A stretch of 64,000 bases of DNA from Macrostomum lignano (taxonomy: Eukaryota): positions 62,001 through 126,000 of the forward strand of contig NIVC01000463.1 in assembly GCA_002269645.1 (NCBI GenBank), read 5' to 3'. This document shows, in pieces, positions 22,201 to 28,200 of the stretch. The stretch's first letter is position 1; each line of letters starts with the position of its first letter. The translations under genes were made by a program, and so were the position numbers. The notes beneath the pieces were generated by a model. It was given only the letters and a program-made list of their open reading frames with translations. It did no database searches and was not told the origin of the DNA.

Positions 22201-25200
22201 GATGGCCTAGGAATTCGTAAGAGCTAGATATAGGAGGAGCTTATTAGCTTTAGATGTCGGAAATTCAGCTTTAGAGCAGTCAGCAATTAAGTGGGAGCTC
22301 GGCTTCTGTTGGAAATCATTCAGCCACTAAAATTTATCTGCTCTTTGCAGTCACTGGTAGTTGCTGCTTCTATTTCTCTCCGGCCAAATAACGTGCACCC
22401 TAAACCGGCTGTGCCGTTTGCTTTCAGCTTAAATTTTGCTTTCAATTATAATTCGATAATTGTGTTCATCTCTTTGATCTATTTTTCTATTCTGACTCTA
22501 ATTAATATAAAAATCTTTCTTCTGGTCCGTAGAATGTTTAGTTAGCCAAATTGCGTGTCAGTTTTACAACCAAATTTAGCACGAAAATGGTTCGATAAGC
22601 CTTATAGCTCAGTTCGGGAGTGCTTATCTCCCGATAAGCATCGGGAGACTGGCATCGTGTGGAATGGCACCCCAACTGACAAATGTGTGGAATGGAACCC
22701 CAACTGACCCTGAGTGGTATGGAACCTTAACTGACCCTGAGTGGTATGGAACCTTAACTGACCCTGAGTGGTATGGAACCTTAACTGACCCTGAGTGGTA
22801 TGGAACCCCAACTGACACTGAGTGGTATGGAACCCCAACTGACCCTGAGTGGTATGGAACCCCAACTGACCCTGAGTGGTATGGAACCCCAACTGACCCT
22901 GAGTGGTATGGAACCCCAACTGACACTGAGTGGTATGGAACCCCAACTGACACTGAGTGGTATGGAACCCCAACTGACACTGAGTGGTATGGAACCCCAA
23001 CTGACACTGAGTGGTATGGAACCCCAACTGACACTGAGTAGAATGAGTCGATGACATCCCAACTGACATCGTGTGAAATGGCACCCCAACTGACACTGAG
23101 TGAAATGGCACCCCAACTGACAAATGTGTGGAATGACAGCCCAACTGACACTGAGCGGAATGACACCCCAACTGACACTGAGTGGAATGACACCCCAACT
23201 TACAAATGTGTGGAATGGCATCCCAACAGACATTTTACAGCACATAAAAACAAACTTAGCATTTGCTTACTTGACCACTGCTAATGCGCTTTTGGGGCAC
23301 ATATGCGTCGTTGGATTCTTTAGCAGTGGGTAGGATAGTCTAATTAGCTCGTATTTATACTGCACTTAGTAGCTAATAAATCATAAATGAACATAAGTGA
23401 TGTATTCCACTTGTACGAGTAGTAGTGTAAATTCACCTGTTTTTCGATTTTTTTTCAGCAACTGCATGCAACAGATTCTGGAGTCGGTAAACTACTGTCA
23501 TCAGCACAACATTGTTCATCGCGATCTAAAGGTAAAATAGTTGTTAAACCGGTAAACTAATTTTTTGAATATTTCTTTATTGAAATAAATTACATGTAAT
23601 GCCCTTTTATGTCTTTTATTTGTACAGTTTTAAAATATAGTTGCTTTGTGATCAATAAAATAACTTTAATTGTAAAGATGCGTAGCTTGTTTGTTAATCT
23701 TTCTGCCTGCTTACATAGATCGCGCTCCTGTTTAAAGGAAGAAAGCAAAGAGAATTTTGATTAATATCTCAATATATATGCGCATATACGAGCTGTACTA
23801 GTAGGTAGGTAAGAGGGGATTTCTCACGCTGCAGGGATTAGAACGTTCGGGCCTCAAGACGTCTTGCTGTCCCAGTTAAACAGGAGCCACCGGCTTCCCT
23901 CTATTCCCGAAGAGCTTCGTGATGAGGGGCAAAATCCCATTTTCATTTTTTCAGCGTGTTCCTTCCGTCTTCCAGCTGTCCCCCATCTTTATCCCCCACT
24001 CCATCGTCATGGCCTCGCTTTCCTCATCTCGCGCTTCCCCCCTCCCCATTCCCCTGTCTGCTCCTGCTCCATTTTCTGCTTCCTTTCCGTGTCAGCTCAT
24101 TCTGTGTTTCACCTTTCGCAACCTACCATGTTTCTCTAGCTGAGCCTCCTAGACTCTGGCTCATTTATATATATATATATATATAAATATGACGAAGTCT
24201 GCAAGTTCGCGAGATTTCCTGTTCAAACAGGAGGCTCACCCATCCACCCAAAAGTAGTCTTAATCTTTCCCATTTAGCTCCGTTTCTTATAAATTTATAA
24301 ATTTCTATTTATATAACCGTCTTTCATATTGCATCTCTACCGTTTCACTACATTGTACGATGCTTTTTGTCTGCACATGTCACTGGGTCTTGATTGTTTG
24401 CAACGAGAACCCTCCCCGTTTCTGCCTGCTAGTTTTTCTGTTTCATGAAAAGTTCTTAAGCTCGTAATTTTGACTATGCTAAAAGTCGGTTGCTACTTTT
24501 ACAAGATGTTCGTACAGTCTGCTATTCATTAGTAGAAACTGAGGTTTTTGAGCGAATAATTGTGCTAGAAAGTGTTGAAGGCTGTTTTTTCAACTTTGTA
24601 CTCGTATATTGATTTTTTTAACTTGCAAAATTTTGCAAGAGCTTTGGTCTCTATTGGCTAATTTGTCTGACTATTGACTGACTTGCAATTGGATTGCAAC
24701 TCAATAATGGCAAATATTCTGAATAAAGAATCAAGATAGCTAATTAAAGATAGGATTTAGTTGCTTATTAAAGACCGGGTGTTCTAGTCTGGTCTTTTTT
24801 ATTTATGAACTGGATCTCATTGCGGTAGCTTTTTAAGGTCCTAAAGTATACTCGATGCAGAATCGAAAAATGGAAATTTAATTGCAAGTTCTTTACATCC
24901 AAGACAATTAGAGGTTCTTAAAAACCACGTTAAAAATGTTGAAACATTTAAACAATGCATAAAAATTCCTGTATACACTCGTATAGCCAGAGAATCTGCT
25001 GTTATCAAGCAAGACAAAAGGCGCCGCTGTAAAATTGGCAGACTTTGGTCTGGCCATCGAATTACAACCGGATTTGGCTAACGATTGGTTTGGTGCGTTG
25101 CTTATATGCGTACTGATTTTCTTTTCTAAATCAAGCAGCTAGGGAATACAGCTAGCATAATTATTAACTAGTGCTCGCTAAAATTGTATTAGTTTAAGAT

Positions 25201-28200
25201 AAAGGGTTAAGTTGAAACTAAATACAAATCATATATGTATGAAAGTTAAATATTAATTTGAAGATGCAGTCATGCCTAGTAATAAAAGAACTTAAAAAAA
25301 GGTTTTTAATAGAAAACTTCGACACCATTTGTTGCCAGCTAGTGCCTAGAAAAAATAAAGATTTACATGTAATAATAAATGGTAAAATTTCAAAGATCAA
25401 AATAATTTGGATCAAACGATCGCTTACGCTTTAATCGTAAGAGACGACAAAGAAACGCAGGGAAACAGAAAGTTTGAAAACTAGTAACCCAATAGGCATT
25501 ACTCAACCCACATCAGTGTATATGAATATAAAGCATTAATACGATGGCTGGTATGGAAATGATATTTTAGGTGGATTTAGAGTCACTGACTAGTGTACGC
25601 TCCTTAGATAAGCTTCATCCATCCCACGCCTCCAGGTAGAGAAATGGAAGAGTTAGCTGGGAGAGAATGGAATGGGGCCGACCTCTTTAAAGATAAGCGT
25701 CAAACATCCCACGTTCTGTTATAAAGTATATAAGGACTAACGTGAAAAAATAAAATCGAATAATCTACTAATAAATAAATAGCTTTCGTCACCCAATTGT
25801 ATAACTTTAGAAAATATTTAGTATACGATATTTTGAATAATTGGTTACTATAGCGACTATTTAGAATCAAATTGCTATTGCTATTGCTGGAGTGTAATAA
25901 TGAAGTTGGCGAGGTTTTAGTGTGATTATAACTTCAATCAGCATGTCAAATATTAATGATACAATTGTACACATCCGAGTCATAATCACACGGTCCTGTT
26001 TATTAATGTACTCTGTGTGTCTACACTCTGCTATCCATCTAACTATGCATCTCATGGGCATTTAATCGATGTACATATAATACAATAACTACTCAATTAT
26101 TTATATATATGTACGCAGTGCCTAATATTTCTTGGCTATAAGCTTTTGTCTTGCATTTCCCTTTCCTAGTTTTATATTCACACGGCGTTTGCTTCTTTTC
26201 CTCTTGCATTTATTTACAACTAAATATCTTCTTTGCTGGTCTTTCTCTAACTCGGGTTGGAAAGAGTATAAAAATCTTCCTCATTTGGAAATGAGATACA
26301 CAGCTGAACTAACACATGTTAGTTTGAATTTCCCTTATCTTTTTCTGTAGTCTCCCAATAGACTTTAAATTGGATGATGATTGAGTGGTGTGAACTACTG
26401 GCTTAGTACAGTACCAGCTGAGCTATTCGAAAAATAGAGTTAAATATTCCTTATGTCCGAAAAAGAAGCTGATTAATACACAGTAACTTTTCGCGCTGAC
26501 AAAAATAACGACATTGTTTTTTTACAAAAATATAACCACTAATGCATTGTTGCATTGCTCATGTACTATTGTAATTTTTTAATTATTAATGTCTTTTTGG
26601 TGGCCAATTTTTTTTTTATATCATATTTGCCATGGGCAAAACTCTAAAAAAAGAATTAAATTGATCTTCGAAAAATCAATCAGTGTTATTTTTCATTTGT
26701 ATTTCATCCATTTGGTGTTAATAATGCGCTACTTGATTTCAAATCGCATAAAATTCGCCTAACAGACTCTTTGATGCTGTTTTTTGCTTGCTAACTTTTC
26801 CTGTCCCGCGTTTCACTTGTTTTAGTTAGCCTCACTATAAGATGTATAAAAATAAAACGAAAAACTTTTAGCCAGAGAATCTACTGCTGGCCAGCAAGGC
26901 CAAAGGTGCCGCTGTGAAACTGGCCGATTTCGGCCTGGCCATTGAGGTGCAGGGCGAGCAGGCTGCTTGGTATGGTACGTGCTGAGAGCTTCTGCTATGT
27001 GAACGTACGAGATATCGAATTGAAAAAGATATGTAAAAATAATGAAGCTTAATTGTAGTTATAGTTAAAATGTCGTAAGAAAGGACTTTTCAAGTAAAGC
27101 ATAAAGAAATTTTAGAAATCGTAGTTTGTTTATCTATAGACGCTTTAAGTTGTATCTTTTTTAGAAATAACAAGCCATTTTTGTACCAGACGTACTTAAT
27201 ATTCCAATAAAAATAGTTCAAGATGATTTAATCTATTGTAATAAAAATAAAACAAGTTTTAATGCAGAAAAATATAAATCCATGAAACTAGCTTGTTTAA
27301 CAAGGTTAGCTTTTAATTAAATTTAAAGGAATTCAGACAACTTCACCAGTATTCTTGTTGAATGCTGGTAAAAAAACCACCAGTGTTTTATATAATAAAC
27401 ATATGGACGTCAAATGGCTTGCTATTACTACTATAAAAACTTTCACTGCAGCACGGTTTTTTATCTGCAGATGCTTAGTCTTATGAATAGTAAATATTAC
27501 ACCGTAAAAATATGCGTTTGATTTTGGAATTGGCACCTTTGAATCCCCTGTTTGATTGTTAAATTTTTGTAAAAATCACACCTCAGCTTGGATTGCTGCT
27601 TACCTGCTAGTAAAAGTATCAGTGTTTTTTATAGTTAAAGATGTGATAATACCTCTAAACCGCCTGACCCGCAATCAAATCCTCCAGTGTTTGTTGTTTG
27701 TCATCACTAGCTATTTATATTCTCGTAATAATTTTGAATCTACCCACCTACTAAGTTTCTGGCTTTCTTGTTCACTGGATTTTTTTTTCAATTTTTGCTA
27801 TGGGTTTTGACTTATTACGGGAATAACCATTAACTTTTTTCGATAACCGGAGCTTGTATTAGCGTAAAATCTCGAAAACACACCTTTTTAAATTAGAAGT
27901 AGCAGTCTTAAAGCATATTGGTTAGGGTTAAAATTTTCACCAATCCAATGATTACATCACCCATACTAAGTCAATTAATTGGGATTAGTGAATATTTCGC
28001 CTTAAGTTCTATTTCTGTTGTATTTTGCCTGCTAACTTTTAGCTGGTATATATTAGGTTCGAATTGCTAGTAAACTATTTTTTAAGTTTATTTTGCTTCT
28101 TAGTTTCAATTTATCTTCTACTGTCTTAACTAAACACTTACTAATATATGGGTTGGTTTGCTTTTAATTTGCCAGCACGCGCCGCTTTCTTCCTGTCTTA

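What the first reader, a model, noticed from the sequence alone, without database searches (positions are those of the whole stretch)
24987..26974. CaMKII with two mutually exclusive DFG/activation-segment exons
Seen: tandem paralogous exons, both phase 0 to 1, so joint inclusion frameshifts. 6b is canonical ([21 protein letters not shown]). 6a is one residue longer and rewrites the activation segment ([22 protein letters not shown]), adding a Pro and two Asp. Established: this segment shapes the substrate-binding surface and is strongly conserved in CaMKII. From memory, a duplicated exon 6 exists in vertebrate CAMK2D but with much milder differences. Inference: splice-switched kinase subunits with different substrate preference or autoinhibition, able to co-assemble in one holoenzyme.
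Basis: partly seen in the sequence, partly recalled or inferred. Interest (0 to 1): 0.7.

Follow-up and report, generated by a model that had tools for sequence, protein, structure and literature searches.

The report
Flatworm CaMKII alternative activation-loop exons
A CaMKII gene of the flatworm Macrostomum lignano has two tandem copies of the exon encoding the kinase's DFG motif and the first half of its activation loop; both copies are conserved and both appear in transcript-based gene models, so this is a real but fairly ordinary pair of alternative exons whose effect on the enzyme has not been tested.

Summary
The window is Macrostomum lignano contig NIVC01000463.1. It holds a CaMKII gene at 19266-35375 (+).

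**Exon pair.** Exon 6a (24987-25092, 106 nt) and exon 6b (26872-26974, 103 nt) both have ag|..|gt splice sites and both run from phase 0 to phase 1. Including both, or neither, gives an early stop codon.

**Usage.** GenBank models for this assembly come from RNA-seq only. This gene is annotated with 6a. A 94.5%-identical second copy is annotated with 6b. All three annotated copies of an older paralog use a 6a-type exon.

**Conservation.** The older paralog (synonymous sites saturated) has the same 6a-6b pair in the same order. Exon 6a is under purifying selection (pN 0.11, pS 0.88). So 6a is not a pseudo-exon, and the exon duplication predates the gene duplication.

**Distribution.** Schistosoma, Lottia and bird CAMK2D each have a single DFG exon.

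**Correction.** The vertebrate CAMK2D "exon 6A/6B" pair is the neighbouring HRD (catalytic-loop) exon, not this one.

**Limits.** Known substrate-contact residues lie in invariant positions, so a change in substrate specificity is unproven. No junction reads or tissue data could be examined.

This is a new member of a known kind, of moderate interest.

The parts
19266..35375 (+). CaMKII gene, from start codon to stop codon (BOX15_Mlig024299g1, protein PAA82550.1, Macrostomum lignano)
   Evidence: My exon model with 6a and both linker exons translates exactly to P0121. Locus L003 places the annotated gene at this span. Pfam domains on record are Pkinase and CaMKII_AD.
23459..23531 (+). Constant exon 5 ([25 protein letters not shown]; helix alpha-E and HRD catalytic loop), ending in phase 0. 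It is single-copy here.
24987..25092 (+). Exon 6a, 106 nt, phase 0 to 1. It encodes the end of the catalytic loop (PEN), strands beta7 and beta8, the DFG motif, and a derived, one-residue-longer N-terminal half of the activation segment ([11 protein letters not shown]).
   Evidence: It is included in the transcript-derived model P0121. A 6a-type orthologous exon lies in paralog L001 at 21063-21168.
25093..26871 (+). Intron of 1779 nt between the two alternative exons. It is too long for steric exclusion and holds no element conserved with the paralog.
26872..26974 (+). Exon 6b, 103 nt, phase 0 to 1. This is the canonical version ([10 protein letters not shown]). It matches bird CAMK2D and the commonest mollusc sequence (held by 42 of the listed full-length hits) at 32 of 35 residues each.
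   Evidence: It is used in the model P0123 of the near-identical copy L002.
28382..28465 (+). Constant exon 7 ([29 protein letters not shown]; P+1 loop and APE motif), starting in phase 1.
32097..32198 (+). Linker exon L1 ([34 protein letters not shown]), phase 1 to 1.
32816..33004 (+). Variable linker cassette exon L2 (189 nt). It is present in P0121 and skipped in P0123. An internal acceptor at 32909 is used in other models (P0122).

Best explanation
This is a pair of mutually exclusive exons that arose by tandem exon duplication in a CaMKII gene of the flatworm Macrostomum lignano.

Each mRNA takes either 6a or 6b between constant exons 5 and 7. The result is two catalytic subunits that differ at about nine positions. 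Two of these lie in the beta7-beta8 turn (A to S, A to T). The rest lie in the stretch from DFG+5 to the start of the P+1 loop (V to L, G to P, E to D, Q to L, A to D, Y to F, and one extra residue, Asn).

Exclusivity at the protein level is enforced by the reading frame. Both exons have lengths of 3n+1. Double inclusion or double skipping therefore creates an early stop codon far upstream of the last exon junction. Such transcripts would be expected to be lost through nonsense-mediated decay (inferred). Which exon is chosen is presumably set by trans-acting splicing factors (inferred). No conserved RNA-pairing element was found.

The duplication is old. It predates the split of the two M. lignano CaMKII paralogs, whose synonymous sites are saturated. 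Both versions have been kept under purifying selection since then.

Functional inference: 6b gives the canonical enzyme. 6a re-shapes the exposed N-terminal half of the activation segment. In CaMKII this segment needs no phosphorylation. The change probably tunes catalytic properties or contacts with the regulatory segment or neighbouring subunits, rather than direct substrate contacts. Both isoforms share the same hub domain, so they could mix in one holoenzyme.
For: - Anatomy and phases.
- Organism and gene identity: P0121 is 100% identical over the aligned kinase and regulatory part. My full exon model translates exactly to P0121. L003 matches the window span.
- Transcript evidence: the GenBank annotation of Mlig_3_7 derives only from RNA-seq and transcriptome assemblies (StringTie, TACO, TransDecoder), with no ab initio prediction (PMC5730564). 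Models with 6a only: P0121. With 6b only: P0123. With a 6a-type exon only: P0125, P0242, P0243.
- The pair is present in the same order, with ag/gt sites and the same donor variants (gtgcgt for 6a, gtacgt for 6b), in the window, L002 and paralog L001.
- Window against L001 (Nei-Gojobori): exon 6a has 22.2 synonymous and 8.8 nonsynonymous differences, pS 0.88 and pN 0.11 (binomial P about 5e-8 against neutrality). Exon 6b has pS 0.43 and pN 0.013. The other exons have pS 0.68 and pN 0.062.
- Seven informative sites, three of them synonymous, plus the 3-nt indel group 6a with 6a' and 6b with 6b'. Four third-position sites group the exons by gene.
- In the recent duplicate L002, each exon has one synonymous change, against 3.3-3.9% mismatches in the flanking introns.
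Against: - No junction reads or long reads could be examined. Strict mutual exclusivity and the relative use of each exon are inferred from five assembled models.
- The window copy and L002 are 94.5% identical. Which copy produces which isoform may therefore be an artefact of read assignment.
- WormBase/UniProt-type models (P0122, P0124, P0241) join 6a to 6b in frame through a cryptic acceptor 4 nt inside 6b. I read these as prediction artefacts but cannot exclude a rare transcript.
- The 6b-type exon of the paralog has no transcript model in GenBank.
- No functional difference has been shown. The AlphaFold models were too poor to use. The variable residues are not known substrate contacts.
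Confidence: 0.85

Rival explanations
1. Exon 6a is a decaying or unused duplicate (a pseudo-exon), and only 6b makes functional protein.
For: 6b is the canonical sequence seen in all other animals sampled. 6a is the divergent copy.
Against: 6a is in the transcript-derived model of this very gene. 6a-type exons are in all three models of the paralog. 6a keeps its open frame, splice sites and a pN/pS of about 0.12 across a divergence with saturated synonymous sites.
Confidence: 0.03
2. The two recent gene copies have divided the labour: the window copy always uses 6a and the L002 copy always uses 6b. The alternatives would then be expressed from different genes rather than by regulated splicing of one pre-mRNA.
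For: The annotation shows one isoform per copy: P0121 on the window contig and P0123 on L002.
Against: Both copies keep both exons, with only one synonymous change each and identical splice-site contexts. The copies are 94.5% identical, so short reads cannot be assigned reliably to either. The submission filter kept only alternative transcripts with a distinct CDS, and only one model per locus appears among the search hits, so absence of a second model for a copy is weak evidence.
Confidence: 0.08
3. The tandem pair is an assembly artefact, in which collapsed or mis-joined alleles or homeologs were placed in series.
For: The Mlig_3_7 assembly is highly redundant and repeat-rich (PMC5730564). 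The window is full of minisatellites.
Against: The same 6a-6b arrangement occurs on three separate contigs, including a paralog with saturated synonymous divergence. 6a and 6b differ at 26% of nucleotides and by a codon indel. That is far more than alleles or homeologs differ here, at about 4-5%.
Confidence: 0.01
4. The two paralogs each duplicated the exon independently, and their 6a-type exons then converged.
For: In L001 the 6a-type exon is closer in nucleotides to its own 6b (85 of 103) than to the window's 6a (75 of 106). Four third-position sites group the exons by gene.
Against: Seven informative sites group the exons by type, three of them synonymous. So do the shared codon insertion, the same exon order and the same donor variants. 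The sites that group by gene are explained by the GC3 difference between the genes (0.46-0.65 against 0.85-0.86).
Confidence: 0.05

Closest known systems
Vertebrate CAMK2D mutually exclusive exons 6A/6B (mouse olfactory bulb; Genes Cells 2025, PMC12060085)
   Same: Same gene family. A tandemly duplicated exon inside the kinase core is used in a mutually exclusive way. One version is canonical and the other is tissue-restricted.
   Different: It is a different exon. In bird CAMK2D loci the duplicated exon encodes [9 protein letters not shown]..HRDLK (helix alpha-E and the catalytic loop), which corresponds to Macrostomum exon 5. The DFG exon is single there. Vertebrate exon numbers run one ahead of the Macrostomum numbers. 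I inferred this from the positions of the regulatory-segment exons, not from a vertebrate exon table. Macrostomum has one HRD exon and two DFG exons. The two events are therefore independent.
Mollusc CaMKII alternative HRD exons (RefSeq isoforms of Haliotis and Octopus; Lottia gigantea locus)
   Same: The kinase core of a lophotrochozoan CaMKII is diversified by a tandem exon pair.
   Different: Here too it is the HRD exon: L010 19304-19378 and 20171-20245. The Lottia DFG exon is single.
JNK (MAPK8/9/10) exon 6a/6b and p38-alpha (MAPK14) mutually exclusive kinase-domain exons (from my own knowledge, not tested here)
   Same: Tandem-duplicated, mutually exclusive exons replace a short stretch of a kinase catalytic domain and give isoforms with different properties.
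   Different: The kinase family differs, and so does the region replaced (the C-lobe around subdomains IX-X rather than the DFG motif and N-terminal activation segment). For JNK, isoform differences in substrate binding have been measured. Here nothing has been measured.
Arthropod mutually exclusive exon clusters governed by docking-site and selector RNA pairing (Dscam1, 14-3-3 xi, Mhc; from my own knowledge)
   Same: Tandem homologous exons are chosen one at a time.
   Different: No conserved intronic element or convincing inverted repeat was found here. Reading-frame incompatibility alone is enough to exclude double inclusion from the proteome.

Membership tests
[quoted passage not shown] | Ser/Thr kinase domain with HRD, DFG and APE motifs | tested here: met
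   HRDLK, DFG and SPE are present in the translated model. Pfam PF00069 is on record for P0121. The best PDB matches are CaMKII gamma and delta, with E-values of 1e-176 and 1e-174.
[quoted passage not shown] | Autoinhibitory and calmodulin-binding segment with Thr286-type and Thr305/306-type sites | tested here: met
   [34 protein letters not shown] is present and aligns to CaMKII gamma without gaps.
[quoted passage not shown] | C-terminal association (hub) domain | tested here: met
   PF08332 CaMKII_AD is on record for P0121. Exons A1-A4 are at 34176-35375.
Mutually exclusive exons from tandem exon duplication | Adjacent homologous exons of near-equal length in the same phase, each with its own splice sites | tested here: met
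   The exons are 106 and 103 nt, both phase 0 to 1, both ag|..|gt, and 74% identical in nucleotides.
Mutually exclusive exons from tandem exon duplication | Mature transcripts contain exactly one of the two | tested here: inconclusive
   All five RNA-seq-derived GenBank models contain exactly one. No junction or long-read counts were available. Three models from another annotation fuse both exons in frame.
Mutually exclusive exons from tandem exon duplication | Both copies are kept by selection in relatives | tested here: met
   The paralog L001 keeps both copies. Exon 6a has pN 0.11 against pS 0.88. Exon 6b has pN 0.013 against pS 0.43.
Frame/NMD-enforced exclusivity | Double inclusion and double skipping both shift the frame and create an early stop codon | tested here: met
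   The stop falls inside 6b when both are included (codon 194) and in exon 8 when both are skipped. Actual degradation by NMD was not tested.
Steric-hindrance exclusivity | The intron between the alternative exons is too short to be spliced | tested here: not met
   The intron is 1779 nt (25093-26871).
U2/U12 spliceosome incompatibility | One flanking intron has U12-type splice sites | tested here: not met
   All four splice sites are GT-AG. The donors are gtaaaa, gtgcgt and gtacgt, and none is a /RTATCCTT-type donor.
Docking-site/selector RNA-pairing exclusivity | Conserved complementary intronic elements | tested here: not met
   Only exons are conserved between the window and L001 in blastn-short. 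The inverted repeats found are AT-rich chance-level matches and are not shared between loci.
Vertebrate CAMK2D exon 6A/6B pair | The same (orthologous) exon is the duplicated one | tested here: not met
   Bird CAMK2D loci L007 and L009 have a tandem HRD-exon pair and a single DFG exon. Macrostomum has the reverse.

The most novel reading that the evidence does not exclude
The 6a-type exon defines a distinct catalytic class of CaMKII subunit, maintained for a long time in the Macrostomum lineage and apparently the main form of one paralog. Its re-modelled activation segment would change basal activity, calmodulin-independent autonomy, or contacts with the regulatory segment or neighbouring kinase domains. 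Cells could then tune holoenzyme behaviour by mixing 6a and 6b subunits. Taken together with the independent HRD-exon pairs in vertebrate CAMK2D and in molluscs, this would mark the HRD-DFG core of CaMKII as a recurrent target of splice-level tuning.
Probability: 0.2. Interest if true: 0.6.

Novelty: new member of a known kind. Interest (0 to 1): 0.4.

Why it matters
CaMKII isoform diversity is usually attributed to the variable linker. Splicing inside the catalytic core has only recently been reported, for CAMK2D exon 6A/6B, and its function is unknown.

A second, independent and long-conserved case affects the DFG/activation-segment exon. It occurs in an animal where transgenesis works (PMC5730564). 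This offers a natural experiment on what this invariant loop does in a kinase that needs no activation-loop phosphorylation.

It also has a practical use. Existing annotations treat the locus inconsistently: one isoform per copy in GenBank, and artefactual double-exon fusions in UniProt.

Tried and rejected
1. **Short protein search.** A search with a 119-aa fragment carrying 6a returned only short CaMKII fragments, none with a 6a-type loop. It even missed the window's own protein, so it says little about other taxa.
2. **Structure prediction.** AlphaFold2 models of both isoforms, built from 34-sequence alignments, had mean pLDDT of 45 and 48. They were unusable, so no structural comparison or fold search was attempted.
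3. **Conserved intronic elements and RNA pairing.** Neither blastn-short nor the inverted-repeat scans found anything beyond chance.
4. **Rfam.** The scan of the window at gathering thresholds found nothing.
5. **Expression data.** I looked for the Mlig transcript ids in the supplements of PMC5816591 and found nothing.
6. **Dicrocoelium locus.** No DNA was returned because the gene spans more than 100 kb.
7. **Literature.** Searches for a DFG-exon alternative in any CaMKII, or for any work on Macrostomum CaMKII, found none.
8. **Insect origin.** My first guess that the window was from an insect was wrong. The full-length search identified Macrostomum lignano.
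Full report
**1. The observation**

- Exon 6a is 24987-25092 (106 nt). It reads [35 protein letters not shown] plus the first base of a Gly codon.
- Exon 6b is 26872-26974 (103 nt). It reads [34 protein letters not shown] plus the same base.
- Both follow an ag acceptor. The donors are gtgcgt (6a) and gtacgt (6b).
- The upstream exon ends ...HRDLK|gtaaaa at 23531 in phase 0. The downstream exon begins at 28382 in phase 1 with [12 protein letters not shown].
- The copies match at 76 of 103 aligned nucleotides. 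They cross-match at E about 5e-13 within the window.
- Including both exons gives a stop codon inside 6b (codon 194). Skipping both gives one in exon 8.

**2. Gene and organism**

A tblastn scaffold and manual splice-site reading gave a complete CaMKII gene on the + strand, 19266-35375. It has 11 kinase and regulatory exons, two linker exons and four hub exons.

A full-length protein search identified the organism as Macrostomum lignano. P0121 (PAA82550.1, BOX15_Mlig024299g1) is 100% identical over the aligned part. My exon model with 6a and both linker exons translates exactly to it. The annotated gene on contig NIVC01000463.1 of assembly GCA_002269645.1 spans exactly the same 16,110 bases.

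**3. Are both exons used?**

The GenBank annotation of this assembly was made only from RNA-seq and transcriptome assemblies (StringTie, TACO, a de novo transcriptome and TransDecoder). The models are:
- P0121, this gene: 6a only.
- P0123 (PAA66834.1), on a 94.5%-identical second copy (L002): 6b only.
- P0125, P0242 and P0243, three copies of an older paralog: a 6a-type exon only.

So 6a-type exons are not rare oddities. They are in four of the five transcript-derived models.

Three UniProt entries from another annotation (P0122, P0124, P0241) join 6a to 6b in frame, using a cryptic AG 4 nt inside 6b. That would duplicate the beta7-DFG core of the kinase. I read these as prediction artefacts.

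I could not look at junction reads. Strict exclusivity and usage ratios therefore remain inferred.

**4. Conservation**

The older paralog (L001; protein 81% identical to the query overall) carries the same pair in the same order.
- Its 6a-type exon is at 21063-21168 (…[28 protein letters not shown]).
- Its 6b-type exon is at 25524-25626 (…[10 protein letters not shown]).
- Both have ag/gt sites and the same donor variants as in the window.

Nei-Gojobori comparison of the two genes:

| Region | pS | pN |
|---|---|---|
| Exon 6a | 0.88 | 0.11 |
| Exon 6b | 0.43 | 0.013 |
| All other exons | 0.68 | 0.062 |

- In the other exons, synonymous sites are saturated (dS about 1.8).
- Exon 6a has 22.2 synonymous and 8.8 nonsynonymous differences. 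The binomial P against neutrality is about 5e-8.

Seven parsimony-informative sites group 6a with 6a' and 6b with 6b'. Three of them are synonymous, and the codon indel agrees. Four third-position sites group the exons by gene instead. These fit the GC3 difference between the two genes.

The exon duplication therefore predates the gene duplication, and both versions have been under purifying selection since. In the recent duplicate L002 each exon has a single synonymous change, against 3.3-3.9% mismatches in the flanking introns.

The derived states shared by the two 6a-type exons are Thr in SK-T-KG, Leu after DFGLAIE, the Pro-Asp pair, and one extra residue. The remaining loop residues differ between them (LAND against QSSA).

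**5. Distribution**

Among 120 full-length top hits (molluscs, annelids, nemerteans, arthropods, a trematode) the segment is nearly invariant: E-V/I-x-x-x-x-x-W-F/Y, always nine residues. Only the Macrostomum proteins carry the LQPD version with one extra residue.

Three other genomic loci have the same exon boundaries but a single DFG exon:
- Schistosoma mattheei (L004);
- Lottia gigantea (L010);
- bird CAMK2D (L005-L009).

As far as these tools can see, the pair is specific to the Macrostomum lineage. No other free-living flatworm could be examined.

**6. The vertebrate comparison**

Mouse and human CAMK2D do have mutually exclusive exons 6A and 6B. Exon 6B makes up about 10% of transcripts in olfactory bulb (PMC12060085).

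In bird CAMK2D loci, however, the tandem pair is the HRD exon ([25 protein letters not shown] and [25 protein letters not shown]). It lies upstream of a single DFG exon. Vertebrate exon numbers run one ahead of the Macrostomum numbers, so vertebrate exon 6 corresponds to Macrostomum exon 5. I inferred this offset from the positions of the regulatory-segment exons.

Lottia has a comparable HRD-exon pair. RefSeq isoforms of Haliotis and Octopus use one or the other type. Macrostomum has only one HRD exon. The flatworm event is therefore independent and affects the neighbouring exon.

**7. Mechanism**

Three known exclusivity mechanisms are not supported here.
- Steric hindrance is excluded, because the intron between the exons is 1779 nt.
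- U12-type splice sites are absent.
- No intronic sequence is conserved between the paralogs, and no convincing docking-site/selector pairing exists.

Frame incompatibility, followed by nonsense-mediated decay (inferred), is enough to keep double or null products out of the proteome. Exon choice itself presumably depends on trans-acting factors (inferred).

**8. Function**

CaMKII numbering follows the alignment to solved structures. The residues that contact substrates and activators in crystal structures are K137, E139, G175, G178 and Y179 (PMC9336311). All are encoded in exon 5, in the invariant PEN of exon 6, or in constant exon 7.

The positions that differ between 6a and 6b are 144, 147 and 163-171. 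They lie in the beta7-beta8 turn and the N-terminal half of the activation segment.

A direct change of the substrate groove is therefore not indicated. An effect on the conformation or dynamics of the activation segment, or on contacts with the regulatory segment or neighbouring subunits, is more plausible. It remains untested. The structure predictions failed (pLDDT 45-48).

Co-assembly of the two isoforms is plausible because the hub exons are shared.

**9. Verdict**

This is a genuine, long-conserved alternative exon pair in the catalytic core of a flatworm CaMKII, with both versions present in transcript-derived models. I found no description of it in the literature. Both isoforms already sit in GenBank as 'hypothetical proteins'.

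It is a new member of a well-known kind (tandem-duplicated mutually exclusive exons). It has a recently described but non-homologous parallel in the same gene family. Interest is moderate.

Noticed in passing
L010 19304-19378 and 20171-20245 (Lottia gigantea); L007 4147-4221 and 4643-4717; L009 4973-5047 and 5903-5977 (bird CAMK2D): The HRD/catalytic-loop exon of CaMKII is tandemly duplicated in a mollusc genome and in bird CAMK2D. RefSeq isoforms of Haliotis and Octopus use either type (ESVNYCH.HG or EGVNHCHQN). The vertebrate '6A/6B' pair may therefore be one instance of an older or recurrent duplication of the HRD exon. The order of the two bird copies differs between L007 and L009.
   Followed up: partly
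window 26872-26876; proteins P0122, P0124, P0241: UniProt models of M. lignano CaMKII from another annotation fuse exon 6a to exon 6b in frame, through an AG 4 nt inside 6b (…[14 protein letters not shown]…). This duplicates the beta7-DFG core. It is probably a gene-prediction artefact and worth correcting.
   Followed up: partly
window 1-12000, 20913-21296, 22659-23232, 45715-50895, 52277-53004, 56015-59759, 62610-62909: More than twenty distinct tandem arrays occur in the window. Most have units of 16-48 bp, 8-60 copies and about 77-99% matches. There are also long TAGA, TGAT, GATA and TCTCC microsatellites. Two arrays lie inside CaMKII introns 2 and 4. They account for the blocks of extreme GC skew and most of the long spurious ORFs.
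   Followed up: partly
window 32816-33004, with an internal acceptor at 32909: The CaMKII variable linker is itself alternatively spliced. The 189-nt Gly/Ser/Ala-rich exon is included in P0121 and skipped in P0123. It is entered at an internal acceptor (GKASA…) in the P0122-type models.
   Followed up: partly
window 26920-26963 against L001 25572-25615: Exon 6b is 89% identical in nucleotides between the two old paralogs, including a 44-nt run without any change. Its pS (0.43) is lower than that of the rest of the gene (0.68). This could reflect gene conversion or a constraint at the RNA level, such as splicing enhancers.
   Followed up: no
window about 1-9300 (-), ORF 6622-7221: An Exo70 exocyst-subunit gene lies upstream on the minus strand (Pfam Exo70_C, E 5e-25; annotated as a 745-aa product on L003). 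It diverges head-to-head from CaMKII.
   Followed up: partly
window 38000-40000 and 45285-53635 (-): There is a GC-rich block (51% GC) with a 173-aa ORF that has no Pfam match. ORFs on the minus strand (for example 53153-53635) looked to me like the extracellular domain of a Cys-loop receptor, but they gave no significant Pfam hit. These remain unresolved.
   Followed up: partly
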